Shown: positions 31,235 through 60,754 of the stretch, piece after piece
Position numbering within the stretch: position 1 is the stretch's first letter
Layout of the letters: each line of letters opens with the position of its first letter
Source of the DNA: Selaginella moellendorffii
Taxonomy: Eukaryota; Plantae; Lycopodiophyta
NCBI RefSeq assembly: GCF_000143415.4
Contig: NW_003314320.1
Span: forward strand, 1,202,796-1,266,795
Reading direction: 5' to 3'
DNA length: 64,000 bases
Notes under the pieces: generated by a model
Database searches by the model: none
What the model saw: only the letters and a program-made list of their open reading frames with translations
Told to the model about the DNA's origin: nothing
Translations under genes and position numbers: made by a program

Positions 31235-32179
31235 ATGGCTGCTGACGAGCTCCAGAACTCGAGGTATCTCATGCTACACTCGATCGCAGCCCACTGGGAT
31301 TTCGATCCTGCCACGCTCCTCGTGGGTCGCTTTGCCTGCTCAGACGTGGACGAGATCCGGGCATACTCTGCAGCAGCGGGCGCGGCGATGGTCTCGCAGA
31401 TCAGACTCCATTTGTCATCACCGGGAAGCCAGCACAAACGATCTGGACCAGTTCCTCTTCGTGGGAACCAACAGTAGAGGAGATGCGGCAATTCCAGATG
31501 AGGATTTCAAGAAGCTATCCTACACAGAATCCAGGAGTGTGCGTCCATACAGGTCGCGCTTGGTGTATCAGCGGTTCAAGGCGATGAGGCAGGAACTCAT
31601 CATCGACGAGTCTGGAGTTCATCACTACATACGTGCGAAGGATGATTTAGGCAGTGCAGTTGCCCCGTTTGTGGGAGCTCTTCACATCGTCCCGAATGGA
31701 TCAAGGTTCGATGGCAGTGCACGTCGCCCAGTTGGAATGGTATCACTGGTTCGCTGCGACGGTTACTGCTTGACTGCGGCTCAATGTCTGGAAGGTTTCG
31801 ATGGTGACGACAACACTATCTTCGTCAGCTTCCCACGGATGAGCGATCATTCGTGCTTTTACGAGTGTAAGATTGCCAAGGCCGAAGAGTTTGTGGTGCA
31901 CTTGGAAGCTAAAGAGCAACCAAGCGTCAAGTGGTGGTTTGGACCGCGTCTGCCTCAGTTTTCAAGTTCAGCGGCCCCAACAGCACGCAACTCGTGGAGT
32001 GTCCGATGGTTGATTCGTTCGTATGTCCATTCGAGGGCATTGTATTGCAGAGCGCGAAGATCGACCACAAGCTGTCGCTAGGAGGTCCTGTTGTCAACTG
32101 TACCGGCGAGATGAGAGGGGTGATTATTGCACACAGCCTACTGAAGAAGACCAGCGACCGGAGAAGAAAAGCGAGATGA
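31235..32179 (+). pseudogene. Trypsin-like (HtrA/Trypsin_2-fold) protein with catalytic residues lost and frameshifts
   Basis: DGYCLTAAQC (His to Gln) and LSLGGPVVNCTGEMRGVI (GxSGGP Ser to Leu). The coding signal is spread over three ORFs. Confidence 0.6.
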
Positions 32180-32614
32180 AAGTGCAAAGTGTTTCGGACT
32201 TGCAGGAGTTTCTAGATGATGCACTGAATGGAAGAACGTAAACAACAAGCTGAGCAGGACTCGAGGCGATGCAAATTATGAGAGTATTGGTACTTCTTTC
32301 TGGTTCTCATTCTTCCTTTTTCTTTCTTGTCTGTTAGAGTGGAAAAATTGCTCGGAACTCAGGAGGTTAGTCCAGTCTTGTTGATCTAGTAGTTACCAAT
32401 GTATTCCTCGCTTGCAGAATTTATCGACAGCGCTGTGACGGAGTTTAATGCTCCACCGTCTAAGCGTCCGAAAGTTAAATACGTCCCCATGTCCGAGGAG
32501 AAAATCCAGAAGTTTTACAAGGAAGCTGTCAGAGAGGTTTTTAGATCTTGTTGTCAGGATAAGCAATGTGTTTGTCGCATTTTTGTTTTACTCCAAATGT
32601 GAATTGATGATCAT

Positions 32615-32985
32615 TCCGCAAGATGCATGGATTCCAATGGCCCTGGATGGATTCGATAAACACATTCATACTGAATCATACACAGGGAAGGAAGTTTTTC
32701 CCGCGACTTTGGAGATTTAGGATAGGGTGTTTTCTTGCCAACGCTAACTCGCATCTCACGTGAGTTGCTAGACAGACACAGTCTATACACCTGTAGCGTT
32801 TCCTTTATGTCGATTTGCGATTCTGTAATCCCACGGGTTTGGAGGTTGGCATGGTGATGAGTGTTTTCTTCGCACCATTTTGGCTGGTACAGGCGCCCGT
32901 GCTCCTGGAGCTGATTAATCCATGACCGCCTGGATCATCCCAATGGCGGCCTTCTTGCAGATTTCCAGTACCGCGCAGCAGGAGG
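32615..32985 (+). pseudogene. Degenerate copy of the PMT gene's upstream region and first codons
   Basis: Matches 39810-40335 (e.g. tgcatggattccaatggccc, aatccatg.ccgcctggat, ttcttgcagatttccag). Confidence 0.8.
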
Positions 32986-33178: not shown

Positions 33179-33352
33179 TGTGAGGGCCAAGTGTACAACT
33201 ACGATGCCGTATACTAATATTAGCGTAGTGGATTTTGGTAGCCGTTAGATTGGTTTCAATCCGGACCACTCGCTCCTGTATATAAGCTAGGGTTTTTGGG
33301 CTAATTGATATGCACATTTCTGTATTCCCTTTCCATATTCCATGCACTCACA
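33179..33352 (+). repeat. 5' LTR
   Basis: Direct repeat of 38093-38266 with 8 substitutions in 174 bp. Confidence 0.95.
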
Positions 33353-33664
33353 TTAGTGGAGTTGAGGGGCACCTTTGATTGTCCCTAGGGAGTGCTTGGA
33401 TTTAGGATTTCGGTTTAGATCTAGCTTTTGCATCATCTAAATCTCGCTTTTTCCATTTCCTTTCTTTTGTTCTTTCCTTTCAAGATTTTGGTTTAGATTT
33501 AGCTTTTGCATCGTCTAAATCTCGTTTTTTCCATTTCCTTTCTTTTGTTCTTTCCTTTCAAGATTTTGGTTTAGATCTAGCTTTTTGCATTGTCTAGATC
33601 TATCATTTCTTTCCAGCTTTTTTGTCATTTCTCTTCTTTTGCTCTTTCTTTTTAATTCATCTTC

Positions 33665-34597
33665 ATGGCTGATCTGCAATCTCCTCTTTTGACTCTAGAG
33701 TAGCAGTTGGTTCAATTGCTTGATGCTATGCGCTTGCAATTGAACAACCAAACTCAGTTGATGGTGGTGTTCACGGCACATTGTACAACTCCTCCCGCTC
33801 TTGGTGCCAATCCTCGCGTTCGGCCGGAGTTCTTTCGCGGGAATCCTGGGGATGATGTGTACCATTGGTTCGATCACTTTACGGTGATTGCCACATATCA
33901 TTCTTGGGATGATGCTCGACAGTTGCGTGAGTTTCCCACGTGTCTCCAAGGGACGGCGTTGCAGTGGTACAATGGTTTGAGCGTAGTCACTCATGGGGAT
34001 TGGAGTGTTCTCCCGGACGTCTTCAAATGCGCCTTCGGACATGCCGATGATTGTGATGATGCTTTCCAACAATTGCATCGTCTTCGCCAAGGGCCATCTG
34101 AGTCGGTGATGCAATTTTGCGTTCGTTTCCGAAGTCTTTTGCTTCGTGTGGAGCTAAATATGTCAGAGCGGATCAAGCTAGGAATGTTGTGGCTAGCCCT
34201 TCATCAAGATCTTGTCGGACTTGTGCATGCACTTGCTCCTACCACCCTTGACGATGCTCTTCGTTTGGCACAACGTTATGAAACGTCGCCTCTTCCACTT
34301 CTCGCTGCACGTCCTTCCACTTCACTTCCTATGGGTGATGATCCTGTTCCAATGGAGGTTGATGCTGCTGCTGCTCGAGTCCAAGGACAAGTGCGAGGAC
34401 ATGGTCGTGGCCGTGATGTTTGCTGCTGGGCGTGTGATGAAGTTGGTCATACTTATCGGCGTTGCCGTCATTTTCCGGATTGGCAACCTCCATTTCCTGG
34501 GTGGAGACCTTGGCGTCAGCAACGTCCCCTGGGTGCTGCTGTAGTGGAAGGTCTGGACACCAAGATGCATCCCGGAAACGAGGAGTCGCGCGATTAA
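33665..34597 (+). pseudogene. gag: gag, with a premature TAG at codon 13
   Basis: Retrotrans_gag-like LRQGPSESVMQF, PVPMEVD and the CCHC knuckle CWACDEVGHTYRRC. Confidence 0.9.
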
Positions 34598-37500
34598 CGG
34601 AGGGACCTTGCACAAATAAATCAATGACCCCTCCATCTTTCTTTTGAGAGTATCATCAAGGGGTTCACTCAGCACCAGTTCATCCAGTGTTTACTTTCCA
34701 AGCTCGTTTTTATAACAAGAGGTCTCCTATTATTCTCTCCGTGTTGGTTGATACAGGTTCGAGTTTATCTTCTATTGCTCGACCTGTTGCCACACGTTGT
34801 CGTCTACACTTGCGTCATGTGGCAGAACCAGTTTTCATTCTTTATGGCAACGGCCGTACACATGCATGTGCACAGGATGAGGTGGACCTGGTTGTGCATG
34901 TGTGCGATCTCGAGCTTGAGTTGCAGTCGTTGCGGGTGGTGCTGAGTCAAGCTTTTGACCTCATTCTTGGTATGGATTGGTTGCAACGCAATCATGCCAA
35001 GTGTGACTTTGAGGCTTCTCCCCCTTGTCTCATACTTCCTTATGTTTCATCCATTCCTCTTACTTTCATACCCCTTCGTCCCTCTACTTCTACCTCTGCT
35101 TCCATTACTTTTGTTCCCCCACTCTTTCCTTCTGTGTTTCCATCTTGTTCTGCTTTTCCCTTTTCCGATCCCTCCGACGCTCTTTGTGTTGTAGCAGTTG
35201 ACCGGCTCATGAAGGAGTATTCTGATCTCTTTGAATTTGACCTATCGTCTGGGGCCAAGATTGCCACACGTCATCCGATTCCAACCGGGGATGCTCGTCC
35301 AATCAAGGTTCCTGTTCGTCGTCAGTCACCTAAGGAGATCAAGATTTTACGAGCAAACGTCAAGGAAATGCTGGAGAAGGGTGTTATTCGGAAGTCACGG
35401 AGTCCTTGGGCATGTGAACCTCATCTTGTGACGAAGTCTGATGGGAGTATTCGTTTCTGCATCGACTATCGTCTGTTAAACGAAGTGACGATCCCAGATG
35501 TGTATCCTCTTCCTCACACTGCTGATCTCTTGGATCGTCTGGGGCGAAGTCGTTGGTTCACCAAGCTAGATCTTGCTTCTGGGTATTGACAAGTATCGAT
35601 GGCCGAAGAAGATATTCCTAAGACTGCTTTTCGTACACCATTTGGTTTGTACGAGTTCTTGGTGATGCCGTTTGGTTTGAATAATGCTCCAGCAACTTTC
35701 TAGCGGATGATGGACGAGGTTCTTTGCGATATGTCGGAGGTGACTGCTGACTTCATTGATGATGTCTTGATCCACTCGGAGGGGACGTGGGAGGAGCACG
35801 TTCGTGATGTTTGTAAAGTGTTGGATCGGTTACGTGATGTTGGTTTAAAGCTGAAGCGGTCAAACTGTGTGTTTGGGTCAAGGACACAACCTATCTTGGG
35901 TACCGTATTTCTCATGAGGGTTTGCAAATTGATCCTAACAAACTTGTGGCTGTTCTAAAGTTCCCTACTCTGAAGTGTGTGAATGATGTGCAACGCTTTT
36001 TGGGTAAGGTGCAGTATCTCGGTCGTTTTGTGGATCATCTTTCCGATCGCACTACACCATTGCGAGCATTGCTGAAGTCATCAACATCATCTTTCATCTG
36101 GTCTCCGGATTGTGAGCAGGCGTTCGTGGATCTCAAAGAGCTATTGATGACTCCTCCAGTTTTGGCATATCCTGATTACACTCGACCTTTTATTTTGCGC
36201 GTGGATACTTCTGACATTGGTCTTGGAGGTGTGTTGATGCAAGAGAGCTCGAGTGTACCTGGTCAGCGCCATCCCATTGCATACATAAGCCGTACATTAC
36301 AACCAGCGGAGATGAACTACTCCACGACGGAGAAGGAGTGTTTAGCAGCAGTTTGGGGTTTCGAGAAACTTCATGCATATCTACATGGTTCTCGGACGTT
36401 ACTTGAAAGTGACCATGCTGCTGTTACTTCATTATTGAAGCGGAAGAACCTGGTTGGTCGTACGGCTCGATGGGCTTTGAAGCTTCAGATATATGATTTC
36501 AATGTTGTTCATCGCCCAGGGAGTTCTATGGCTGATGCTGATGCCCTTTCTCAGGCTCCTCTTCCTTCTCCACTCACTTCTCATGTTTCTGACGAACCTG
36601 TTATTCCAGCGTCTATGGATTTTCTAGATGAAGATTCTATGCCATCGGCGGTTGTTGTCCTTGATGTTCAGTGTCCACAGGGCGCAGAGCAAGATCTACC
36701 TTCTCTTGATGAGGTTCGCGAGGCTCAAAAGATTGAGCCGTGGATTCGAAGGCTTCGAGATGGGTTTGAGAATCCTGCATCACTTGCTGATGACTTGCCT
36801 TTCCGGCATTTACATTCTCAATATCGCCTTGAAGATGGCCTTCTTTATTTTGTGGTGACAGATCCTGATGATCATTTACAATTGGTGGTGCCTTCGGTGT
36901 TTATTCCGCGGTTTCTCCATGCCTACCATGATTCTCCTGTTTTAGGTGGGCATATAGGACACCATTGTGTCACCGAGAAGTTGCGCAGGTCTTTCTATTG
37001 GCCGGAGATGCGACGTGATATTATCCGGTATGTGCGTAGCTGCGTTTGGTGCCAAGCTCGTAATACTCCCCCTTGTGCTGCGGAAGGATGGTTGGAGTCA
37101 ATTGCAGTTTCCCGTCCGTTTGAGTTGGTAGCGTTTGATCTTATGGGACCTTTTCCACGATCGACTGCTGGCAATGAGTATGTTATTATTACTTCTGACT
37201 ACTTGACTCGTTGGGTGGAAGTTGGTGCTCTTGCTAGCGCCTTTGCAACTGCTGTTGGATACTTCCTCCTCAATCGAGTGGTGTTCCAGCATTCTTGTCC
37301 AGAGCGGATTCTTTCGGATAATGGTCCTGCATTTATGGCTGAGGTATTTCATGTTTTGACATCTCGGTTGGGGATACGCCACACTTTTACAAGTGCTTAT
37401 CATCCACAATCAGACGGTTTGGTGGAACGGCTCATTCGGACATTCAAAGGGATGATTGCGATGTATGTGAACTTTCAGCATTCGGATTGGGATGGTTATT

Positions 37501-37982
37501 TGCCATCTCTTCGGTATGCCTATGTCACAGGGGTACAGAGTTCTATTGGTGCTTCACCATATAAACTTCTATATGGTCATGATCCAATATTACCAACAGA
37601 GTTGGGTTTACCTTCACGATTGCCACGAGCTCCTGATGCTAGGTCATGGGATCAGTATTTGACAAGCATTCTTCCACTTGTCCGAGCAGAGTCTGCCGAA
37701 CACTTAAGCCGCGTACAAGTGGGACAACAACAGCGCTACAACTCCCATCATTGTCCACCTGCGGAGTATAAAGTGGATGATTTGGTGTTAGTCCGTTTTC
37801 CCCATCTTACGGTACGTGGTTTATCTAAGGGGCTCCTTGCGCAGTGGAAAGGACCGTATCGGGTGTTATGGCAAGTTGAACCGCAAGTTTATGAGGTTCA
37901 GCATGACGTTCAGCAGGCCGATCCTCTGGAGATTGTGCATGTGTAGCGGTTAAAACGCTTCATACAAAGGGATCAGGAGTAG
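34570..37982 (+). pseudogene. pol: pol (protease, RT, RNase H, integrase with GPY/F) with stops and one frameshift
   Basis: LVDTGS, DLILGMDWL, RFCIDYR, KLDLASGY*, MPFGL, FIDDVLI, DTSDIGLG, LSDNGPAF, AYHPQSDGLVER, WKGPY. Confidence 0.95.
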
Positions 37983-38092
37983 TTAATACCGTCTACAGAT
38001 CCGCCGATGCCTCCTCCTGACGTTCCTCCAGATCCCGGCCCATCTACAAGAGAACCCTGATGGCATTTCATTATTCCAAGAGGAGGGGATGA

Positions 38093-38266
38093 TGTGAGGG
38101 CTAAGTGTACGGCTACGATGCCGTATACTAATATTAGCGTAGTGGATTTTGGTAGCCGTCGGATTGGTTTCAATCCGGACCACTCGCTCCTGTATATAAT
38201 CTAGGGTTTTTGGGCTAATTGATATGCACATTTCTGTATTCCCTTTCCATATTCTATACACTCACA
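38093..38266 (+). repeat. 3' LTR
   Basis: Direct repeat of 33179-33352. Confidence 0.95.
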
Positions 38267-38639
38267 TAGTTAAATTTGGATGTGGATTCTATTCTTAAAG
38301 CCTATTCTGAGTTGTGTAGCTTAAGTCTTCATCTTCTCTTGATCAAAACCCTCTAACACCGCTGGCTGCCATTAAACCACCTAGGCTAACAAACAAACCA
38401 TCTCTAGGAGTATCCATTGGACATTTAAATTTTCCTCAATTGAATTACAATGCCTTTGGATCTTGTCTCCATGCCTGATTCATTCGTTTCTTTGGCTGCT
38501 TCATCTTCCACAACTTACCACAGTAATTTTCAGAATCACACTCAAGCACACCAGGAGAACTCTTCCAATATCTTCGAATTTAAATCTGCTAGAGCTTTCA
38601 TCGTCAACGTTTTCCTTCTCGTTATGCTTTTGAGCAGCA

Positions 38640-39400
38640 GCTTTTATGAGTGTAAGATTGCCAAGGCCGAAGAGTTTGTAGTGCACGTGGAGGCTAAAGA
38701 GCAACAAAGCTTCAAGACTTGCATGGCTACCTGGTTTGGACCTGCGTCTGGCTCCTAACAGCACGCAACTCGTGGAGTCTCCGATGGTTGATTCGTTATC
38801 CATTTGAGGGCATTGTAGTGGCGAGCTCAAAGATCGACCACAAGCTTTCACTGGGAGGTCCTGTTGTCAACCGTGCCGGCGAGATGATAGGGGTGATTAT
38901 TGCACACAGCCTACTGAAGAAAAACAGCGACTCGAGAGGAAAAGCGTGCGTTACCTGGTTTGGAACCAAGATGTGTTTCGGACTTGCAGGAGTTTCTAGA
39001 TGATGCACTGAAATGGAAGAAGCACTCGAGGTGATGCAAATTATGAGAGTTAAGTTCATTGGTACTTCTTTCTGGTTCCTATTTCTTTCTTGTCTTTTAG
39101 AGTGGAAAAATTGCTTGGAACTCAGGAGGTTGGTCGCGTGCATGGGAGCTGACTTCACTTCTCCCGCTCAGGAGTGGTATTCGCAGCATCCACTGACAGG
39201 TTCTTAAACATCTATTTGATTTTGTTGACACTAATGTATTTTTCGCTTGCAGAATTCATCGACAGAGCTTTGAGGCAGTTTAATGCTCCAGCGCCTAATC
39301 GTCCGACGTCCGCATGTCCGAGGAGAAAATCCAGAACTTCTACAAGGAGCAGGAAGCTGTCAGAAAGTTCTTCCATCGATGGAAAAACCCAATTTTCGCC
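38640..39400 (+). pseudogene. Second, 5'-truncated copy of the trypsin-like pseudogene and its downstream sequence
   Basis: Aligns to 31855-32540 (FYECKIAKAEEFVVH, KIDHKLSLGGPVVN). Confidence 0.85.
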
Positions 39401-40269
39401 TGTACATCTAAAAGACTCCTATTCTTTCGTTCACAATCGTGTGCTTCTTTCTCTCGGATGAGAGATCTGGAGGAATTTGGGAGTTCTTTCTCTAGTTTCT
39501 TCGTAGATCTTCTTCACAGATTTAAATTTGCATAAGCAAAGATCATGGTGAAAGCATAGATCGAGCGCCAGTTTTCTGTCGAGCAGGAGTGTGACCTCAT
39601 GGAAAACGAGCTCCGCATCTTCCTAGCATATCTGCAAAGTTGGACGATGGAATAATGCAGCCTTTTATTAAAACAGAATATCTAGATCTTGTTGTCAAGA
39701 CTGATTCTAATTGTCAAGATAAGCTCGAAAAAGCAATGCCTTTGTCTCATTTTTATTTTACTCCAGATGTTGTCTTTCATACAGGCCACCAAAATGCCCA
39801 TAGTCTCAACCGATGATTATTCCGCAAGATCCTCTAACTTGCTGTCTACTCTTGGTGTATGATCTCGCTCGCTTTCTCCTAATTTGCTGACAGACACGGT
39901 CTATACAAGAAGACTGTGGCTTTTCCTCTACGTCGATTTGCGATTCTAATCTTTGCTTGGACGTTTTACATACGAGTGCAACGTGCCAAATTAGCATTCA
40001 TAGGCGATGACTATGCATGGATTCCAATGGCCCCAGATGGGGACACGTCATGCCCACACATCGATGGACACATTCATACACAGGGAAGGAAAATTTTCCC
40101 GCGACTTTGGAGGTCGGCGGTTCGATTTATGATAATGGGTGTTTTCTTGCCAACGCCAAGCAACTCGCATCTTGGGCGGTATCTTTGGCTGGTTCACCGA
40201 TCAAGAAGAAGCGATGGCGCCCGCGCTCTCTTCTCTCTTCTCATCTACCGGCGTGTAGCCGATCAATCC

Positions 40270-42448
40270 ATGGCCGCCTGGATTACTGGGATGCTGGCGA
40301 TCGCGGCATTCTTGCAGATTTCCAGCACCGCGCAGCTCAATCTCTCCAGCAACATCGAAATTCTGGGGTTTCTTGATGGCCAGGGCTCGGTCGCGATCGA
40401 GGGACTGATAGGGATTGGGAAGGAGGAGAGCGTTGCTGTGGCGGAGGTGGAGGAGGAGATTATCTCGTCGCGGCTGTCACAAAATTCTACTTCCGACAAT
40501 TCAAGGCTCAGGGACTTGAGGCGCTCGATTTCTTCCCAAGCCTGCAAGTCGATCCCAACGGATTCAATCCCTTGCCAGATCGAGAATGAGTCTAATTCCT
40601 CCAGCTGCGAGCGCCGGCGCATTGAAAATCCCTGTCTCGTTCCGCTGCCACGGGGATACACGCGCCCGGATGCCTGGCCTTCTTGCGTCCACAAGGTTCG
40701 CGCCGCTTGCGATTCCTTCCCTCCAAGCGAAGAGGAATTCTAGGGTTTGATCCTTTCGATTTGATGCCAGGCAAGGGCGGAGAACATCGGCAATGGCGAT
40801 CTTGCGCGGTCGACCGCCGCTGCGATCCAAATGCACGGCACCAAAATCTCGTTTCGATCTGCCGAACTGGACGCCGCCAGGAAATATGTCGATGAGCTCC
40901 TCCAGGTAGTAGTGGCATTCTTGAGATGTACAGAAGAATTCTTGCTTTCTACAGTCGCTACCAGGATTTGAGCCCCGGTTGGCCCTGAATCTAGAGGCCG
41001 GTGTGGGGAGCTTGAGCGTGGAGTTTGATAGACATGGAGTTTTGGCGCTTTCCATCGCATCGAAGAAATCGAGAGCCGATGCCATCCAGCTTGTTCTCGA
41101 GAGAGGCTTTCCCGGAATGGTCCAGAGTTTTGCCAGAGAAAGACTTCCATATCCAAGCGAGGCCTTTGATCTCATCCATTGTGGAAGCTGTAGTACGTCT
41201 TGGGCCAGGAAGAGTGAGTGAGCATTGGATGTCTAAGCAATTGACAAACTGGTTTCTTGCTTGCAGGAGCGTTGCATCTTTTCGAAGCTGATCGAATTTT
41301 GCGACGAGGTGGTCTTTTCGTTTGGAGCAATACATCAGGAAAAGAAAAACTATGGAACGGTTAGTCTTTTTCAGTTTTCTTTTTATCTTGATGGTCTTGA
41401 TTGATAGAAGCTTTCTCTGCATTTGGCAGATATGTTGAAAGCAGCAGTTTCGATGTGTTGGATCCTGGCTTCGAGAAAAAACAAAGTTGCTATTTGGCAA
41501 AAGCCCACGAACAATTCGTGTTATCAGCTACAAAACCACTCGGTGTTTTGTGATCCTGGAAGTCCACCTCCTGATGATGCTTGGTAAAATACTCGCGAAG
41601 GGTATGTGATAAGCTGTTGGACTCACACTCAGGTTTTATGCTTTTCGCTGTCAGGGGCATTCCATTGCAAGCTTGTATATCCGGTCCTTCAAAACTAGCA
41701 GCAACAAGTGAAAGACGCAGCTGGCCAACACGATTGCTAAATGCGATGCGCCTCAAGACCATCCTTTCTTACAACAGCTTGAAGTTGGCCACAGTGGAGG
41801 CGTATGAAGCTGACCTGAACTACTGGAAAATGCTGACGGATTTTTACTTGACATCTTTGGGTCCATCAAGGATTCGGGAGATTCGCAACGTTCTCGATAC
41901 AAACGCTGGATATGGCGGGTAAGAGAGAGGCTTCTTGCGTTTTGGAAGCTGATAAAGCTTGGAGATTGTTACGTAGGTTTGCTGCTGCATTGGCATCACG
42001 AAATCCTGCTCTGTCATGGTGGGTGCTCAACGTTTCTCCGGTGGACAATCCTCACAACCACCTCGCAAACATATTTGATCGAGGACTGCTGGGAGTTTAT
42101 CACGATTGGTGCAAAGCTCTGCCCATGTATCCACGCTCCTTCGACTTGGTGCATGCTTCTCGACTCTTCTCCGCCAAGCACAAGTAAGCCCCTTGTGATA
42201 GTTTTGATTTCCGTAGTTGCTAATCGCTGATCTGGTGCAGTTGCTCAATGGTTGTCATCCTTCTCGAGATCGATAGATTGCTAAGGCCTGGAGGTTTTGC
42301 GATATTTCGAGATGACATAGGGACGCTGCTAGAGGTGAGGAGTATTGCCAACGCTTTGCATTGGAAGACAACGATTCAGGACACTGATAGTGGACCTCAG
42401 GGCAAAGATAAAGTCATGCATTCCCAAAAGACTTCTTGGCAACCATAG
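40270..42448 (+). CDS. PMT/DUF248 (Methyltransf_29) SAM-dependent methyltransferase, divergent, multi-exon
   Basis: N-terminal transmembrane segment; CLVPLPRGY; IQLVLERG; RLPYPSEAFDLIHC; IRNVLDTNAGYGGFAAAL; DRGLLGVYHDWC; YPRSFDLVHA; LLEIDRLLRPGG. Confidence 0.9.
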
Positions 42449-42668
42449 TGAGGCGAGAGAACTGTGTATTTTGTTTCCGAATTTAAGAGCACGTCTTCCA
42501 TTCAGTTTCAACGTTGATGCTTTCATAAGGTGATCGGTGGAACTCGTTCATGCTGAGAATATTCTTTATTTCTAGTCAGTTCAACTGTCTGTATTTGCCG
42601 TCGCCCACTTCACGCCCATTTCATTTGGTCAGTAAGATGCAATGCTCTGGAGATCGCCCGGGTGCAGC

Positions 42669-42802
42669 GCCATCAGAGAAAATATGTAGCTCCGATACCA
42701 TGTTGGAATGAGGAAGTGTGGACAATGTGTCTATTATGGATCCATTGTCCATGTTTCCTCATTCCTTCATGGTATCGTAGCTGCATATGTGCTTTGATTG
42801 GC
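42669..42802 (+). ncRNA. Candidate pre-miRNA hairpin, miR845/miR1511-like (antisense to the tRNA-iMet PBS)
   Basis: Stem of about 60 bp with G:U pairs favouring the + strand. The 21-mer UAGCUCCGAUACCAUGUUGGA (42687-42707) pairs with the 3' arm with 3 mismatches and no bulge. A lower stem of about 18 nt lies below it. Confidence 0.7.
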
Positions 42803-42989
42803 TAGTTGTTTCCCACCTGGTCTAGTTATAATGCAAATGGAACGGTTCTAGTTCATGGAAAAGGATCTGTGGGACAAAGTTTCCAGAAGATAAGGGAGAA
42901 CAACACAGGGGAAGGATCTCCTTGTGAAAAGTAGCATCTGACATTTTGGAGGCGCCAACCACGGCGACGAGGTGTCTCCATACACAGTG

Positions 42990-43310
42990 AGGACCTACGG
43001 TGTACAAGACGATCTTGGTCTTCAGTGCTACACCAAGGGAATACATGCAGGAAATCGTGAGCAAGAAAGTGGATCCAAGTGGCAGGCTTCTATTCCGCAG
43101 AGGACATGGAGTGGATGCAGAGTCCAGCAAGCCGGGACAGGATTAAGGACTTGAGGACTGGACAAGGGCTTGAATAAGCTTGTGTGGCTGATGACACTCC
43201 CTACAATCCATCCCATGAGCGGGATCGTGGTGTCACCTTTCATGGGTGATCCTGGTGACTAGGAGCTGCAGGAACTTGCTAAGTGTCGGGATGTGGTTGA
43301 TGCTCTTCGC
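42990..43310 (+). pseudogene. Fragment of an NIF/SCP-type HAD (CTD-phosphatase-like) gene, frameshifted
   Basis: ILVFSATPREYMQEIV...IKDLR..DKGLNK..VADDTP...GIVVSPFMGDPGD*ELQEL resembles the NIF-domain C-terminal half. Confidence 0.65.
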
Positions 43311-43311
43311 A

Positions 43312-43410
43312 TCAGGACACTGATAACGTCGGGGCAAAGATAAAGTCATGCATACCTCTATAGTAAAGCGAGATCGTTTTGAAAGAATTGTGTATTTTGT
43401 TAACACGTCT
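43312..43410 (+). repeat. Degenerate duplicate of the PMT 3' end
   Basis: tcaggacactgata...gggcaaagataaagtcatgcat...tgtgtattttgtt matches 42376-42476. Confidence 0.85.
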
Positions 43411-43426
43411 TACAAGTGGCATGGTT

Positions 43427-47178: not shown

Positions 47179-49571
47179 TGTAACCCTGCAAATTTCTAGT
47201 ATCTCAACTAGTGCCCCAGTGCGCTCTCGTAGTCTCCCTGACGAAAGAATGCATTGCCTTGGGCCTAGAAACAAGAAAAGTTCTCACAAACAACTAGAAC
47301 AAAGATTGAAAGATTCATCAATTCCACACACATGAGCACTATGAGTTTATCGGATGATAACTGCATTGAAATATTTTTTGTGTTCCAATCTAAAATCCCA
47401 ATTTCCGCCAGGGTTAAGAAAATAATGTATGAATTCATTTATTTAAATATAATTTTTGTACATAAAGGTATAATATAAAAGTTTATATGAAACTAATTTT
47501 TAGAAAAACAAATCTTAAAAACCACTCATTACCAAAAAGTCTAAACTTATCCTAAGTCTGTCCATTTATGGCCCAATATCCGTCTGTTTATAGCCTAAGA
47601 TTTTGTTTATCGTGTAAGCGACTAATGTTTCCATTCTACTTTAGTCACTTAACCACACCTCCAACCACTTGGAGGAATCTCACTCACAACCTCCATAAGT
47701 CTTATTTTGGACTTGGGCTTGCTAGTCCCAAGAATGGCATCCCTGCCACTTGACCTTTGCACTTGGTCCAAGTGCTCCACGTGTCCGATCCCATGACCGA
47801 CACCCCAAAATACCATCGACATATCAGCCTGTTACACTAAGGCCATGCCCATTCACCTTGGTCACATTGGTGGTCTGACACCACCTACATTACAGTCCCG
47901 TCTCTCAAAGACTAGGTCATCTGTCCATGAATGATCATCCAAGCTCTATTTCGTTAAAGTGGGATTTATTCAGTAAAATGGGACTAGGTACAAATTTTCA
48001 AGTATTTGAAAATGACGTGAAATTATATGTTTTTTGTCCAGGGGCTAGACATATCTGGGGCATGGTGACTAGTGCGGTGACTTTGTGTCCAGACTGAGTC
48101 CATCTGGTTGTATAATAAATCTCATTGTCAAGGTGAACAAGCCGAATCTGAAACTAAAGAAGAGCGACGGCATGCACGCACACACTATTTGTTTGTTCAT
48201 TGAGCATGTGGTGAGCTTTCCAAGATGAACGTCATTCCTATTAGCCAGACATATAACTTAATGGTGAGAACATTTAGATATTATTCAATGTTATCTTTTT
48301 CTAACGAATCTAATTATGAAGGTGTAGCAAGAGGCATTACTAGTCTGGAGAAGTCATTTAACTCATTTGACCCTTAGTGTATTTTCATGAAACTAAATAA
48401 CATTCATATTATTAAGGAATTTCTCTAGTACCTTTTTTTTACGACATAGAGGCTTGCATTTCTTTCAAAGGTGATTTAGTAAAAGGCCTGAGGGCACATG
48501 CCATTCTATTTCTCAGACCGGTATTAAGATATACTAGTGCAAAGGGAAAAAGGTATTTGGTGATCAAGTAAATGGCATGAGGGCACACGCCATTATAAGC
48601 CTAAGCGCTAGTGGACACCTCCTTTTTGGTACTCTCAGCGGTACTATCATCCTTCTCCGGGTCAGTTGTTTTGCTTTGGATTGTTGTCTCTGATGTTACT
48701 GGGGCGTTCTCGATAGTTGTTAATGTTGCCGTTTGTTCAGAAAAATGATCACCTGGAGTATAGTACGGGGAGTTTGGAAGACTTATATATTCTACATCTT
48801 CACCTATCTCCTTCTCCGTCTCCTTTTTTGCCTCACTTACAGATTTTGTGCTTGCCATGAGAACGCTCTTCACCCTAAAATATGGAGTTCGTTGTGTTAT
48901 AAAACGAAACTAACACACACGCTGCAAGGGAATGATGGTACATAAAGCACGTAAGCCCACAATATGGGTTTATGTGCCATTAATATGGGCCACACGCCAT
49001 ATTATTAGATTTATGCACGTGTGATTGGTAAATGCATATGTCACATCATCTTTGTTTTACCTCACACACTATATCAGGCCTAATGAACCATATCACATGT
49101 GCGCACATGCTATATATATGGAGAAGTATTATGCAAGGATAGAAAAATTCAATGCATGATTGTGGAGAGCAATGGCATGAAGCCACATGCTAAATAACAT
49201 TTTAGAGAAAGAATTAAAATAGAAACATGCAAACAGTACTGAGTGGACCAAGACTTAGAAGTGCACAATTGAATGAGGTATTTCTAATAAATATTTCACT
49301 CACCTCATATAGGAATGGCTACCACTCTCAAATGGCGTATCGCCTCATGCCATCACCTCGCAATTTGTTATAACAATCCGATGAATTCATATTCGGCTTG
49401 TTCACCTTGAACTTTAAGTAAGATTTACTAGAACAACTAAGAATTTATACTTGTTATTTGTATCATCTCACCTAGGAATGGCGTAAGGCCACATGCCATC
49501 ACGCCTCCTCTGATTCAGATTCGGATTGTTCACCTTGAAATAAAATACATTAGAAACTTAGTAAAGGAATA

Positions 49572-52397
49572 TTAATGAATCTCACCTTGAACCCGGGTTA
49601 TGAATGCTCTTGCTACATCTCTTGCATGGTCTGGCAAGGTGATGGTGGCACTCTGCTTCCGCATCCAACCATGCACAACATTATCCACCGATATGCTCAT
49701 GCTGGGATCCCTTGGATTCAGCACCCATCTCTTTTCTAGGCAATCCTTCATATATCCGAAACTTGGCTTGAACCACTCCACAGTTACATTGAAGGAGTTA
49801 GTTTCCACGTCCTCCTCTGCATCAGTGATGCAGCGCCCCACCCATATCATTTGTTTTTTATTACTGGGTCTAACAAGCACGACCATTCCTTTGCAGACCT
49901 GTACTGGATTGAATGCTGAATCCGGCTTCTTGTTCCTCAGCCCACAATAGTGATCCTCAACATTGTTATCTGTCACTGCATTTCTAGAGGACATTGTTCT
50001 GCTACTATTTGGTGCTCTGGGTTCTGGCCAAAAGGACTCTTCCAATTTTTCATATACAACCGGCCCATTTTGGATAGCAGATATAATCTTCTACCAGTAT
50101 TCGAGCAAAGGCTTGCACCTCTGAAAATAGGATTCTCCACCAAACACCAACCCCCTCTTCCAGAAGGCAATATGCTATCTAATCCCAGCCACTATACTTT
50201 CCTGGTCTTTGAGTCCATCCCGGCGCATCGGCCGTGGGGAACCCTGAGGAATCATAGGTTCCCCAGTTATGGGATCTCTCTTCAAGAGTTCAATGCCGTC
50301 CACTGGCAGCCACACTGTGTCCCATTCTCTCATCTTGTACCTCATCACTAGAGCACCATCACGCATGCTGAAATGAAATTGAAGAGGCTTGAAGTGGCCA
50401 ATCAGCGTTTCGGATCCGTCCCTGATGTAGCCTCTTACAAACCCCTTAAAGTCTGGAACCTCTGTCAGAAGTGCAGCTTCAACAGTGCCTTTGATGCATT
50501 TTTGGAATTCATCGTAGAGTTGTGGGAGGGTGAGGACATTGGATCGCCGGAGGGACTCTGCCAGGTGACTGAACATGGCATCGACGTCTTCATGAGTGTG
50601 CCCAACCATGAGAAAGCCAAGTGTAACCGTTTCAAATATGCCTTTGGCAACAAGCATCGCCAAGTACGCGAAGACGTACATGTTTTTGTTCTCACTGCCA
50701 ACATTGTCTGTTTGGAGCAGAAGATGGGGTGGAAGGCCACATCGGCCGCAAGAACTTCCTTGAGATTCTACTTCATTTGGATGAGGCTGTGCATTCACCG
50801 GGCGACCAGCCTCGTCGGAATGGCATGAGGCCTCACGTGATAACCCTACAATCTGACGGCCAACATATTCACTGGGATGGCATGGGGCCCCACACAATAC
50901 TGCAAGCCTTTGCTCCTCCTCTAGCTGAACCCTGTATGGGGTTCGATCGACAAGGGCCTTATACAAGGGTTGGCCGTTCAGCTCAGTCTGCGCACTTTGC
51001 AGAGACCTTAAGTGTTTTGCTAGGGACGCAATCATCATGTTTGCACCCCCGCCACCCCATAGAGGTACAAAGAAGTTCCCATAGTTCTGGGCACCATGCC
51101 CATGAGCGATTATGCCAAACAGAGACACAGGCAGCTGCATGGATGAAGAGATTGCCTTGGGGGCAGGATTGAGTCGAGGTAAGCACGTCTTTTTCTGGTC
51201 CATTTTGTCGTGGATGATGCAGAGATAAGAGTCAGGTCTCTCCATGGAGAGAATCCTGTTATGATAATATGCAGTCCTGCAGCTTCTCTGCTCGATGTTG
51301 TGGTCGAGCCGCCTTCTAACCAACGTCTCTCGCTCTTGAGCGATGCAAGAATTCTTCGACAAAGCCATTTTGATAGCAGTGCACTCGTCACACTTTGAAA
51401 AGCTGGAGTACTTTCCTATACTCACATCCCTGAACCTGTTGCTCCACAATCTACTAAATCTAGATTGGCTCAGCTTCCTGTAGCCATTACTCTGGAGTTC
51501 CCGATTCACATCTTCCAATATGGCCCCCTTGGTATACATGGAAGGGAGAACTCGTTGGGTGTCTCGAGTTCCATCTTCCAAGAGGTGGGTTTTATGTGGT
51601 TGCTGCTCGCTACATGTCTCGACAAACCTCTTGAAGATTGCCTCTCCATATACAACATGACCCCTGGTTTTATGAGTACCGTCGTTCCCATGGACTGCCT
51701 GTTGAACCCTTTGTTCCTCGAACTCAGTTTTGATTCTGTAGAATGTGGTTCGAGGGACTCCATAAATGATTCTCCATGCCTTCATGCAGACCAAACCCCT
51801 CTGGAAGACCATGCCCCCCACTTGATGTTCTGAAGCATCAACAGATGACCGTAATGCCTTATACACAAAATTGCGAGCTGCCTTCCAGGACAATGTCTTG
51901 TATCTTGCTCTCTCCTCTTCAATAGCATCCCAATCAGCATGTTGACAGCACCTCCTCTTGCAACAAGCAACTGTCGAGACCATTCGAACCTCCATCGCCA
52001 TTTTCTGCCTTTTCGGTTCGTTGCTCAGATCCCTTTGGCTGTGCTTTAGGAAGGTGTACTTTCTTTTCCCATGAAGAGATGTTCTGTCATCAGTTGTAGT
52101 GGTGTTTGATTGTGAATCCTTCACATTCTCAAACACTAAGTGCCTCAATTTCCACCGCACAATGCTTCCAATAGTCAGACTGTTTTCTTCTGTGTCAACA
52201 ACCTCTAAAATCGCAACTCCAATATCATCCCAGCCCAATTCTTGATTAGCAACCGCATCTCTTGGATCGACAACTGTGGCTAAGCCCTCAGCTACCACCT
52301 CCCCCTCGGGGTTGTTTAGAAACACCTTTGCCTGAATCCATGTAGCACGGTTCTTAAGATCCACGGAGGGAACATACGTTGCACTTGCAGAGGCCAT
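49572..52397 (-). pseudogene. Sola-like transposase, about 941 codons, with two in-frame TAG stops
   Basis: CCKRRC, VCMKAW, HGN, FSKCDEC; putative DDD triad in IIHDKMDQ, LQTDNVGSENKN and FLMVGHTHEDVDAMFS. The 50175-52397 and 49572-50045 ORFs are in one frame separated by two TAG codons. Confidence 0.85.
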
Positions 52398-53692
52398 TCT
52401 GAAAGTGCAGAAAAGAATTTAAGACCATACAAAAAATGATTGGAGAATGGCCTAAATCATAACATACCAAACAACCTCAATAGCATGAGGCCACATGCCA
52501 TTATTCAAACATGCTATTGACACCCACGTGAAATTTCGCATTCACAAAATTGGCATGAGGCCTCATGCCATCTTGATATACACACAGCTACAGGCAAGTA
52601 AAAACATACATGACAATACGCTAGCCATGAAATTGCAAGGGCCCAAAATGGCATGTGGCCTCATGCCATTTCTAAATGTGGTCCTAAGCCATTCCATGGT
52701 GAACATACTAGGAAGCACAAGTGCCGAATATCAAGAGGAAGCGGTAGCCACACCAAGGACAGTGCCGCTCGCAACACCGCAACTACTCGTAGCGCCGCTC
52801 GCAACACCGCAACTGCTCGTAGCGCCGCTCGCACAAACTGCCACTCGCATAAACTGCCACTCGCAATGGCGCTCGCAATGCCGCAACCGCTCATAGACGC
52901 ATAAACCACAGCTCACAACGCCGCTTACACAAGCAGCGCTCACTGCGCTCAGCGGAACCAAGAACACGGCGCACAAAAATGATAGACCTAGGAATGAGTT
53001 CGAGAATTCAAAAATAACACACGCTTGAACGTCACATCAAATCCTCTGACAAACCAGATCTTATGATTCCTCTGACAAATTTCAAACTGAGTAGCTTCTA
53101 GACTTTGCTGTCGGAGGTTGAACTTTGTCACATCATGTCCTTGCCTCGATCCAGCTGTGCCATGTTAGTGATTCGAACTTTGCCATGCCATGTCAGCGAT
53201 CCGCGCCAAGATTATTCGCCGTGTAAAGGAATAATTATGCTGTGTGTGTACGTCCATTTATGGCAATATAAGGCCACACGCCATTCAAAGAATAATGCTA
53301 GTCGAGCATTTTTTGGTGCATTTTTGGGTTCAAAATTGCATGAGCCCACACGCTATAAAGTTTACCTGTACCAAAAATAGAAACAGCTTTATTTACTTGG
53401 GAATTTAAGTGGTTGAGGCATTTTTAAACTTACAAACACATGCCCTACTTACATTCCTTTGGTTGCTTAAAATTCAAAAATATTATAAACCTTTCTTTTT
53501 GCATTTTCAATGTTTTCAATTATGGTTTTTGATTTTCGCAGGACCAGCCTAGTAATCTATTTGCATCCCGTCATGTTTATAGCTAGCTTTCATTTGTCCC
53601 CTTCGCTAGCCTGAGATACATCTGCTCGGCATCTGCCTCTTACAGCATTTGCCCATAAAGGGCATCTTTCTTCACGCAGCATTTGCCACATG

Positions 53693-53718
53693 TTTAGGGT
53701 TTAGGGTTTAGGGTTTAG
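53693..53718 (+). repeat. Interstitial plant telomere repeat (TTTAGGG)3 plus a partial unit
   Basis: tttagggtttagggtttagggtttag. Confidence 0.9.
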
Positions 53719-54887
53719 CAATTCAGTAGCTTGATAAACATGCAAATACAGAACTTGATGCAAAATCCTTTGATATGTCAGGATCATAAACACATTTCAA
53801 TAGAGAGGGTCCTTTCATTTCATAACTCCTTACGTAGATCTTGGTGAAACCAGAGTTAGTGAAGTTGGTTTCTTGTGATCCCACATCTGATTGTGATGTC
53901 CCTTTGCAGTGTCGATGGAAAGGTCAATGCACACCAAACTGTAGAATCTTGGAGCAAAATAATGGTCGGATCTATGGCAAATGCTCCTGAAACATTGTAA
54001 GGCTCGTGTGGTCTCATGTGGTGTCCGATTGAGATGCTTCTTTGCATAGTCATCAAGAAGGACATTGTATACCATTCTTTATTTAGCTGAACATCTGGCA
54101 TTTTTGGAAATACAAGATGCTTTGGAATATCCAATCATGCATGGTATAAATATAGCGAGGGTATTAAATGATATCTCAATCATGATCTTTCTTTTGGATT
54201 TCGCGTGCATGCAGTTCGAGGAATGATGACGTTGCGGATTTCTTTTGGATTTCACGTGCATGCATGCGCGCGGCGATCCAGAAATTAATGGTGGCGCCCA
54301 AGTTCGAGGAATGATGACGTGGCGGGATTACCAACCGTCGTGACATTTCGCGCGTGTGAAGTTAGGTTTTACATTGTACTCGCGCTCGCACACTCGCGCT
54401 CGCATCGCACTCCCACTCGCGATCACGCTCACATTCGCGCTCATCTACCTTCTCTACAGGTTTCTCGTGTGCATCGGCGTCCACTCGCGCTTGCATCACA
54501 CTCGCGCTCGCATCGCACTCGTGTGCATCGGCGTCCACTTCAAGACACACCCAGTTTGTAACTTCGCCGTCAACTCCGCCACCCACACGCAGCCCACTTG
54601 GCGTCCCGGGAGATTTCAGCACCACTCTCCAACTGTAAGTGGCAGAGTAGCCTTGCTGCTACGATCCACTGCACACACAGTGCACATTTGCCAGCGAGTC
54701 CGGCCTCGATTGTCACACCTCCATTCGGCTTCAAATGGTAAGTCTTTTAGGCCAAGTAGAAAATGGCATGAGGCCACATGCCATTCAGTAGCAACATTGG
54801 CATGCACCGATTGGGCTCTCGAGTGCAGTCTGGTTACAGATGGCGTGTAGCCTCATGCCATTTTAGGATGCAGCCTCAAGACATCTG

Positions 54888-60317: not shown

Positions 60318-60754
60318 GATGGCATGTATTTATTTAAAAATGTAACTTATCATGGCATGGGGTTCCATGCCATTGTATTAATATTAAAAGACAATTCTTT
60401 GAGAGGATTTGCATTATACTAGAAGTGTTACAGCATGTTATTGGAAGTCTACGAAGTTGTTTTATTAATAAGGGGAAAGTAAAGATTGAATGGGGACTTG
60501 GGCTCCACCTAGACTCGGAGCAACTGAGCCAATATTAAAAGGATGGAAAGAAATTGGACAACAATGACAAGGAGAAGAGAGAGGTGAAGCAGTGGCAGGG
60601 GGAGGAGAAGTGATTGAGTAGACATTTCCTTGTTTAAAATAAAATGGCATGTGCCTCAATGCAGTTGAATTTTGTTATATTTATATACTATATAAAGGTT
60701 TGGAAACCTTATTTTACAAGTGGGATAATGACAATTCCCACTTTAACGAAATAG

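What the first reader, a model, noticed from the sequence alone, without database searches (positions are those of the whole stretch)
42669..42802. miR845/miR1511-like hairpin aimed at the retrotransposon primer-binding site in a probable lycophyte
Seen: a hairpin with miRNA-like geometry. The 5'-U 21-mer UAGCUCCGAUACCAUGUUGGA has a predicted star CUUCAUGGUAUCGUAGCUGCA (42765-42785), three symmetric mismatches and a lower stem of about 18 nt. Its complement TCCAACA-TGGTATCGGAGCTA reads as an LTR end (..CCAACA) plus the tRNA-iMet PBS (TGGTATCAGAGC, one A>G). Known: angiosperm miR845 and miR1511 carry GCUCUGAUACCA and target this PBS. Inference: an inverted duplication of an LTR-PBS junction created a genome-defence miRNA, convergently or by deep conservation. 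The exact mature register is a guess, and I cannot exclude that it is already catalogued.
Basis: partly seen in the sequence, partly recalled or inferred. Interest (0 to 1): 0.85.

Follow-up and report, generated by a model that had tools for sequence, protein, structure and literature searches.

The report
Retrotransposon-derived microRNA-like hairpin in Selaginella
A spikemoss gene carries in its transcribed tail a very stable RNA hairpin built from two inverted copies of a Copia retrotransposon's LTR-end/primer-binding-site junction, the same design as known flowering-plant microRNAs that attack retrotransposons, but nothing yet shows that it is cut into small RNAs.

Summary
Window 42669-42802 folds into a 58-bp hairpin (-85.1 kcal/mol, z -17). 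The proposed 21-mer and star have the stated geometry.

The retrotransposon origin is now solid. The 21-mer's complement matches real Copia LTR-end/PBS junctions 21/21 in three metagenome contigs. One of these lies 21 nt upstream of a Copia gag-pol ORF. The A>G is a natural PBS variant (17 of 122 sites).

New here:
- The genome is Selaginella moellendorffii.
- The hairpin is single-copy, not a MITE.
- It is transcribed in + sense inside the 3'UTR of a spliced Methyltransf_29 (PMT-like) mRNA.
- All seven transition differences between the arms are G:U on the transcribed strand, none A.C.

The nearest known sequences are rice miR1863/miR1873 and a 21-nt Salvinia small RNA (19/21, same register), not miR845/miR1511. 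PBS-complementary small RNAs were already catalogued in ferns and lycophytes (You et al. 2017), but not this sequence.

Untested: dicing, register, targets in Selaginella, and whether PmiREN already lists it. No small-RNA reads were reachable. The scan noted a similar hairpin elsewhere in this genome (s1-337375, unchecked).

Verdict: a probable young or proto-MIRNA of a known kind. Moderate interest.

The parts
42669..42802 (+). Core fold-back: 58 pairs (51 WC, 7 G:U), 3-nt terminal loop
   Evidence: minus strand folds 18 kcal/mol less well
42658..42822 (+). Extended stem seen when the whole 3'UTR is folded (about 11 further pairs below the core)
   Evidence: approximate limits
42687..42707 (+). 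Candidate 5p guide, 21 nt, 5' U. It is the PBS complement (42689-42700) plus the LTR-end complement TGTTGGA (42701-42707).
   Evidence: Its complement is 21/21 identical to Copia LTR/PBS junctions in L080, L092 and L004. It is 19/21 to a Salvinia 21-mer. The register is inferred, not shown.
42765..42785 (+). Candidate 3p (star) strand. It contains the sense junction TCCTTCA (42763-42769) + TGGTATCGTAGC (42770-42781).
   Evidence: The only difference in the hairpin between alleles (42777 G>A in DNA run X3) falls here.
42708..42764 (+). Upper stem, 20 pairs with no unpaired base (3 of them G:U), then a U.C mismatch, 5 pairs and a 3-nt loop. By inference this is the U5 end of the source LTR. It leaves room for a second phased duplex (42708-42728 / 42744-42764).
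   Evidence: the second duplex is inference only
42248..42448 (+). Last coding exon of the host gene (Methyltransf_29 / PMT-like), stop codon at 42446-42448
   Evidence: Pfam PF03141 E 1.3e-13; spliced RNA contig
42449..42843 (+). 3'UTR of the host mRNA, containing the hairpin. The RNA contig ends at 42843, 11-16 nt after a UAUAAU.
   Evidence: X1 record 1 has GT..AG joints 41917/41976 and 42183/42241 and is continuous from 42241 to 42843
42375..42499 (+). Copy A of a ~115-bp direct duplication (end of last exon plus start of the UTR)
43306..43412 (+). Copy B of the duplication. Copies A and B bracket about 806 bp (42500-43305) that carry the hairpin.

Best explanation
This is a lineage-specific, MIRNA-like fold-back made by an inverted duplication of about 63 nt from a Ty1/Copia element. 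The duplicated piece comprises the last ~34 nt of the LTR, a tRNA-iMet primer-binding site of the natural G variant, and ~18 nt of leader. It arrived with an ~806-bp insertion into the 3'UTR of a PMT-like methyltransferase gene of Selaginella moellendorffii, and it is transcribed as part of that mRNA (shown). Most likely (inferred) a Dicer-like enzyme cuts the stem into ~21-nt duplexes. A 5'-U strand from the 5' arm, at or within 2 nt of 42687-42707, would be loaded into an AGO1-type protein. It would pair with Copia genomic RNAs exactly across the LTR-end/PBS junction. Cleavage there removes the site where tRNA-iMet must prime reverse transcription. In design it is the lycophyte counterpart of rice MIR1863/MIR1873 and of miR845/miR1511. 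Dicing would also detach the host mRNA's poly(A) tail, so small-RNA output and host-gene expression would be coupled.
For: Structure: -85.1 kcal/mol, z -17, MFEI 1.49, and a duplex with 3 mismatched positions and 2-nt overhangs. Origin: the complement of the 21-mer is 21/21 identical to junctions in L080, L092 and L004 and 20/21 to 20 more. The L080 site lies 21 nt before an ORF with Retrotran_gag_2, gag_pre-integrs and rve. Transcription: a spliced RNA contig runs from the exons through the stop codon and the whole hairpin to 42843, with the + strand as the RNA sense. RNA-level constraint: 7 G:U against 0 A.C among the transition differences between the arms. This gives one-sided p 0.008, or 0.03 if the three adjacent pairs count as one event. 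The + strand folds 18 kcal/mol better than the - strand. Single copy: no second copy in the window, and one contig only at >=80% likeness in DNA run X3. The guide arm is identical in three sampled sequences (the window, the X1 RNA contig and the X3 DNA contig); the one SNP is in the star arm. Precedent: rice miR1863/1873 pairs carry the same junction in sense and antisense (PMC3161970). A Salvinia 21-mer with 32,724 reads has the same 5' U and register and is 19/21 identical (PMC5569507 supplement). miR845 and miR1511 target the PBS (PMC7197481, PMC9780303).
Against: No small-RNA reads could be examined. The 209 S. moellendorffii candidates of You et al. 2017 contain no sequence with CCGATACCA. 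This is weak evidence, because that list was built by similarity to miRBase entries. The intact hairpin sits in an assembled mRNA contig (the contig's mean depth is 122, which says nothing about depth at the hairpin itself), so at least some transcripts escape dicing. Above the proposed duplex lies a 20-pair stretch with no unpaired base, within a stem of about 60 bp. That is more typical of young hairpins diced imprecisely than of canonical MIRNAs. No target was found: the window's only LTR element (Gypsy, 33180-38267) has no iMet PBS, and no related LTR end was seen in DNA run X3. The C at guide position 7 mismatches the canonical A-type PBS. The G:U asymmetry rests on 5-7 events.
Confidence: 0.45

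Rival explanations
1. It is an inert fossil. A rearranged or snap-back fragment of a dead Copia element landed in the 3'UTR. It is transcribed passively and yields no small RNAs of consequence.
For: The hairpin lies inside an ~806-bp insert bracketed by a ~115-bp duplication, which looks like an accident of repair. The mRNA contig keeps the hairpin intact. No small RNA with this core appears in the published Smo list. An earlier scan note describes a fold-back Copia in this genome ascribed to reverse-transcription snap-back (s1-432117; unchecked). SNP density in the hairpin (1 in 134) does not differ significantly from the flanks (20 events in about 1320 nt).
Against: The 7:0 excess of G:U over A.C on the transcribed strand argues against neutral decay. 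The stem stays almost intact although the flanking duplication has decayed to roughly 85-90% identity with indels. A ~60-bp RNA duplex in a Pol II transcript is an expected Dicer substrate in plants (general knowledge).
Confidence: 0.3
2. It is a cis-acting 3'UTR structure that controls the host PMT mRNA's stability, translation or 3'-end formation. Its retrotransposon origin would then be incidental.
For: It lies 221 nt after the stop codon and ends about 40 nt before the mRNA 3' end. Pairing appears constrained on the mRNA strand. Hairpin-forming inverted-repeat elements in 3'UTRs are reported to repress translation in rice (own knowledge, not checked here).
Against: Nothing ties the structure to the host gene's function. 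The duplicated relic of the older 3' end (copy B) lacks it, so the gene worked without it. The best-preserved feature is the junction sequence itself (21/21 to Copia junctions), which a purely structural element need not keep.
Confidence: 0.12
3. It is a MITE or another high-copy foldback transposon inserted in the UTR.
For: The whole unit is a near-palindrome of about 134 bp, a size typical of MITEs.
Against: The window has no second copy at up to 3 mismatches or by blastn with word size 7. Only one contig of DNA run X3 covers it at >=80% likeness. No target-site duplication flanks 42669/42802. The arms match an LTR/PBS junction, not a known TIR.
Confidence: 0.03

Closest known systems
Rice osa-MIR1863 and osa-MIR1873 (24-nt 'long' miRNAs)
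   Same: In both, the guide and star are the antisense and sense of an LTR-end + tRNA-iMet PBS junction (published pairs in PMC3161970). Our 21-mer is 18/20 identical to miR1863 and 18/21 to miR1873*. The rice miR1863 star even carries a variant PBS, as ours does.
   Different: The rice small RNAs are 24 nt, while ours is predicted to be 21 nt. The precursors could not be compared. Likeness of the mature part is forced by the shared target, so common descent is not shown. The rice loci are not known to me to lie in a coding gene's 3'UTR.
Scu-miR1863.2161, a 21-nt small RNA of the fern Salvinia cucullata (You et al. 2017, PMC5569507)
   Same: It has the same 5' U, the same length and the same register relative to the PBS, and is 19/21 identical. 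It had 32,724 reads.
   Different: It is known only as a read. No precursor was shown, and the authors themselves suspect that some PBS-type candidates are siRNAs from repeats. For ours the reverse holds: a precursor is known but no reads.
miR845 (Arabidopsis) and miR1511/miR5139/miR8155/miR7782 (strawberry, other angiosperms, Cryptomeria)
   Same: They contain the complement of the tRNA-iMet PBS and are reported to target LTR retrotransposon RNAs there (PMC7197481, PMC9780303, PMC5846777).
   Different: The register differs. miR1511/5139 extend into the tRNA-like side (AACCUGGCUCUGAUACCA) and miR845 extends into a different LTR end. Identity to miR845a is only 12/21. There is no covariance-model match to any Rfam miRNA family.
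Young MIRNA genes born by inverted duplication of their target (Allen et al. 2004 model; MIR1094 in this genome per scan note s1-432147)
   Same: The long, nearly perfect stem has arms that are sense and antisense copies of the presumed target.
   Different: The source here is a transposon junction, not a host gene, and the locus is embedded in a coding gene's 3'UTR.

Membership tests
Plant MIRNA locus (Axtell & Meyers 2018 criteria, cf. bioRxiv 10.1101/213314) | A single fold-back under 300 nt, with no secondary stem or large loop inside the miRNA/miRNA* duplex | tested here: met
   134-nt hairpin, uninterrupted duplex region
Plant MIRNA locus (Axtell & Meyers 2018 criteria, cf. bioRxiv 10.1101/213314) | At most 5 mismatched positions in the duplex, at most 3 in asymmetric bulges, and 2-nt 3' overhangs | tested here: met
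   For the proposed register there are 3 symmetric mismatched positions plus 1 G:U. The register itself is assumed.
Plant MIRNA locus (Axtell & Meyers 2018 criteria, cf. bioRxiv 10.1101/213314) | Small-RNA reads show both strands with at least 75% precision, replicated in independent libraries | not testable with these tools
   No small-RNA run was served. Reads under 31 nt leave no contigs. The published Smo candidate list lacks the sequence, but that list is similarity-based.
PBS-complementary miRNAs (miR845/1511/1863/1873/5139/7782/8155) | The mature sequence contains the complement of the tRNA-iMet PBS (GCUCUGAUACCA) | tested here: met
   It carries GCUCCGAUACCA, one difference. The matching G-type PBS makes up 17 of 122 natural CCAACA-type junctions.
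PBS-complementary miRNAs (miR845/1511/1863/1873/5139/7782/8155) | It pairs across a real LTR-end/PBS junction of LTR retrotransposons | tested here: met
   21/21 to L080, L092 and L004. The L080 site is followed by a Copia gag-pol ORF. The organisms of these contigs are unknown.
PBS-complementary miRNAs (miR845/1511/1863/1873/5139/7782/8155) | Targets are present in its own genome and are sliced there | not testable with these tools
   The window holds no iMet PBS other than the hairpin.
MIR845 / any Rfam miRNA family | The precursor matches the family covariance model at its gathering score | tested here: not met
   There were no gathering-level hits. Sub-threshold hits were to unrelated hairpin families only.
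MITE | Many copies in the genome, with terminal inverted repeats flanked by a target-site duplication | tested here: not met
   Single copy in the window and in DNA run X3 at >=80% likeness; no TSD

The most novel reading that the evidence does not exclude
A lycophyte independently evolved a bona fide PBS-targeting microRNA whose precursor is the 3'UTR of an expressed protein-coding mRNA. Every dicing event would trade one host mRNA for one anti-Copia guide. Selaginella lacks a prominent 24-nt siRNA class and CHH methylation in adult aerial tissue (You et al. 2017), so such post-transcriptional attack on the reverse-transcription primer site could be a main line of retrotransposon control there. 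With the second hairpin noted by the scan (s1-337375), PBS-junction hairpins would be a recurrent invention across vascular plants.
Probability: 0.25. Interest if true: 0.7.

Novelty: new member of a known kind. Interest (0 to 1): 0.5.

Why it matters
PBS-targeting miRNAs are an elegant defence: they hit the one short sequence an LTR retrotransposon cannot easily change. With a defined precursor they are known from angiosperms. In gymnosperms, ferns and lycophytes only reads resembling them have been listed, and those are suspected to be siRNAs. A genomic precursor in the reference lycophyte would make several questions directly testable with existing small-RNA libraries and one degradome experiment. 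The questions are how old or how often re-invented this strategy is, how it works in a plant with weak 24-nt siRNA and CHH methylation, and what follows when the precursor is a coding gene's 3'UTR. If the hairpin is not diced, it is just a tidy transposon fossil.

Tried and rejected
1. The idea that the ~500 bp after the hairpin is the leader and gag of the source Copia was rejected. Pfam found nothing in the ORF pieces or in a 47-aa read-through with X at the stops. tblastn with 27 Copia gag ORFs from the metagenome loci gave only noise.

2. The census of PBS types in Selaginella failed. The window's only LTR element is a Gypsy without an iMet PBS. A homologue search with its pol ORF gave no Selaginella loci (best hit 50% identity). 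The census could not be made.

3. A conservation test through the host gene failed. The last-exon ORF found no homologue in the allowed length range.

4. Literature look-ups of the exact sequence found nothing: no paper holds the 21-mer or its core. The Axtell 2007 and Borges 2018 papers are not held. The Lunardon 2020 atlas does not cover Selaginella. PmiREN-based tables list Smo MIRN2970-2998 without sequences, so I cannot exclude that the locus is already catalogued.

5. I found no local targets. No complementary site with 4 or fewer mismatches to any 21-mer of the hairpin exists elsewhere in the window.

6. The tRNA-primed snap-back origin got no support. Beyond the 12-nt PBS the arm does not follow the tRNA-iMet 3' end (by eye against the tRF AACCTGGCTCTGATACCA).

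7. The search of earlier findings by sequence was blank.

8. Locus L006, a contig from a human-gut metagenome, was left out of all scripts as a precaution.

Full report
**Observation**

As + strand RNA it folds into one hairpin of -85.1 kcal/mol. The 200 dinucleotide shuffles averaged -31.8 (z -17.3) and none folded as well. The - strand folds at -66.8.

The pair list has 58 pairs, 51 Watson-Crick and 7 G:U. The 5'-U 21-mer at 42687-42707 pairs with 42765-42785 with 2-nt 3' overhangs. That duplex has three symmetric mismatched positions and one U.G. Eighteen positions of stem lie below it, and a 20-pair stretch with no unpaired base lies above it. The MFEI is 1.49. When the whole 395-nt 3'UTR is folded the hairpin stays and the stem extends by about 11 pairs.

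**Organism and setting**

- An ORF of the window (19800-20927) is itself in the NCBI-derived collection, on a 1.27-Mb contig. Its cluster mate at 90% identity or more is SELMODRAFT_447564 of Selaginella moellendorffii. This confirms the identity given by scan note s1-432147.
- Upstream on the + strand lie the last exons of a Methyltransf_29 (PMT/QUA2-like) gene, with the stop codon at 42446-42448.
- Downstream on the - strand lies a PI3/PI4-kinase-domain gene, which I read as VPS34-like. Its transcript contig begins near 43374.
- About 115 bp from the end of the PMT last exon and the start of its UTR (42375-42499) are repeated at 43306-43412. The roughly 806 bp between the copies, which hold the hairpin, therefore look like an old insertion into the original 3' end.

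**Transcription**

In run X1 one 1075-nt contig lacks both introns exactly (joints 41917/41976 and 42183/42241, GT..AG). It continues from 42241 through the stop codon and the whole hairpin to 42843. So X1 is RNA, the + strand is the RNA sense, and the hairpin is part of the 3'UTR of the PMT mRNA.

The contig ends 11-16 nt after a UAUAAU. Coverage beyond it drops to a separate contig of depth 3.7. Three more RNA-like runs of the same study hold 53-70% of the sampled words of 42480-43310. Contigs cannot show levels or small RNAs.

**Copy number**

- The 21-mer has no other match in the window at up to 3 mismatches.
- blastn with word size 7, using 42480-43310 as query, finds only the self inverted match.
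- At 80% likeness, DNA run X3 lays a single contig over the hairpin, whereas short repeats elsewhere in the stretch attract several contigs.
- No target-site duplication flanks the stem.

**Origin**

The bare 12-mer resemblance to the PBS is weak evidence: 0.24 such hits are expected per window. I therefore scanned public metagenome contigs for CCAACA + TGGTATC[A/G]GAGC.

- Of 122 sites, 105 have A and 17 have G at the variant position.
- Three sites (L080, L092, L004) equal the full 21-nt complement of the candidate guide, and 20 more differ at one position.
- In L080 the site lies 21 nt before an ORF with Retrotran_gag_2, gag_pre-integrs and rve. A related junction in L025 lies about 260 nt before a Copia gag ORF.

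The 5' arm is therefore the antisense, and the 3' arm the sense, of a Ty1/Copia LTR-end/PBS junction. The A>G is a natural variant. As an inference, a G in the element RNA still pairs with the U of tRNA-iMet as G.U.

The canonical tRNA 3' end is present in the lycophyte Isoetes and in ferns as the read AACCTGGCTCTGATACCA. Nothing retrotransposon-like is left outside the arms. How the inverted duplication arose is open. A scan note (s1-432117, unchecked) reports a Copia in this genome folded back on its own LTR-leader-gag.

**Sign of constraint**

The arms differ at 13 paired positions plus one bulge. The seven differences that are transitions all appear as G:U on the + strand, and none as A.C. 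Under neutral decay half should be A.C. The one-sided probability is 0.008, or 0.03 if the three adjacent G:U pairs are one event. This fits selection for pairing on the transcribed strand, but it rests on few events.

The window, the X1 RNA contig and the X3 DNA contig have identical 5' arms. The one difference in the hairpin (42777 G>A in X3) is in the star arm and costs 3.3 kcal/mol. SNP density in the hairpin does not differ significantly from the flanks.

**Comparison with known families**

- No Rfam family reaches its gathering score. Sub-threshold hits are to unrelated hairpin families.
- miR845 targets the PBS of Gypsy and Copia elements in Arabidopsis pollen (PMC7197481).
- fve-miR1511 targets the tRNA-iMet PBS in strawberry (PMC9780303).
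- miR5139 and miR8155 reads with the PBS complement occur in Cryptomeria (PMC5846777).
- Rice miR1863 and miR1873 are published with stars that are the sense and antisense of the same kind of junction (PMC3161970).
- You et al. 2017 (PMC5569507) list many fern and lycophyte reads of this type under miR1511, miR845, miR1863 and miR5139. They caution that some may be siRNAs from repeats.

The candidate 21-mer is 19/21 identical to Scu-miR1863.2161 of Salvinia (32,724 reads, same 5' U and register). It is 18/20 to osa-miR1863, 18/21 to osa-miR1873* and only 12/21 to miR845a. So it works like this group and is nearest to the miR1863/1873 type. Because the target dictates the sequence, the likeness says nothing about descent.

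Among the S. moellendorffii candidates of You et al., none holds CCGATACCA. The list was built by similarity to miRBase entries (fewer than 3 mismatches, less than 2 nt length difference), so the absence weighs little. Their Smo-miR845 (11 reads) is identical to ath-miR845a and to entries of two ferns. It looks like carry-over.

**Mechanism and odds**

Shown:
- the structure;
- the Copia-junction origin;
- single copy;
- transcription in the PMT 3'UTR.

Suggested: pairing constraint at the RNA level.

Inferred:
- dicing into about 21-nt duplexes;
- loading of the 5'-U strand;
- slicing of Copia RNA at the junction, so that tRNA priming is lost;
- loss of the host mRNA's tail with each dicing event.

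I put 0.45 on the (proto-)MIRNA reading, 0.30 on an inert fossil, 0.12 on a cis-acting UTR structure and 0.03 on a MITE. The long upper stem and the intact hairpin in the mRNA contig make imprecise or inefficient dicing quite possible.

S. moellendorffii lacks a prominent 24-nt class and CHH methylation in adult aerial tissue (PMC5569507). That would give a post-transcriptional route more weight if it operates.

**Limits**

- No small-RNA data, no genome-wide target census and no orthologous UTRs could be reached.
- The exon-joined protein search was left out by rule.
- I cannot exclude that PmiREN already lists the locus.
- The scan noted a similar LTR-end/PBS hairpin on another piece of this genome (s1-337375; unchecked).
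Locus L006, from a human-gut metagenome, was left out of the scripts.

Noticed in passing
window 33180-38267: A Ty3/Gypsy element on the + strand with ~175-bp LTRs 95% alike (TGTGAGG...CTCACA) and gag, protease/RT and RNaseH/integrase ORFs. The sequence after the 5' LTR (TTAGTGGAGTTGAGGGG) is not a tRNA-iMet PBS.
   Followed up: partly
window 31855-32979 and 38640-40336: Blocks of 81-100% identity about 6.8 kb apart flank the Gypsy element. This is a duplicated gene segment that appears to include the 5' part of the PMT-like gene.
   Followed up: no
window 42375-42499 and 43306-43412: A ~115-bp direct duplication of the PMT last-exon end brackets ~806 bp of unassigned sequence that carries the hairpin. 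No Pfam or Copia gag similarity was found in the rest of the insert.
   Followed up: partly
window 42917-43288: RNA run X1 has a low-depth contig identical here except for an 11-nt insertion after 43078. It also has 22 unrelated letters at its 5' end that occur nowhere in the window. This suggests a second copy or another allele that is transcribed.
   Followed up: partly
loci L001-L118 (metagenome contigs): The junction CCAACA+TGGTATC[A/G]GAGC is very common in environmental eukaryotic DNA. 14% of sites carry the G variant, and GAGC is often followed by TA.
   Followed up: partly
PMC5569507, supplementary file 4: The entry 'Smo-miR845.2500' (11 reads) is identical to Arabidopsis miR845a and to the entries of two ferns. 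It probably reflects library carry-over rather than a Selaginella miRNA.
   Followed up: no
window 47946-60754: An ORF at 50175-52397 (-) carries DUF7869 (E 4e-42). It lies within the Sola-like transposon that other notes of the scan describe.
   Followed up: no
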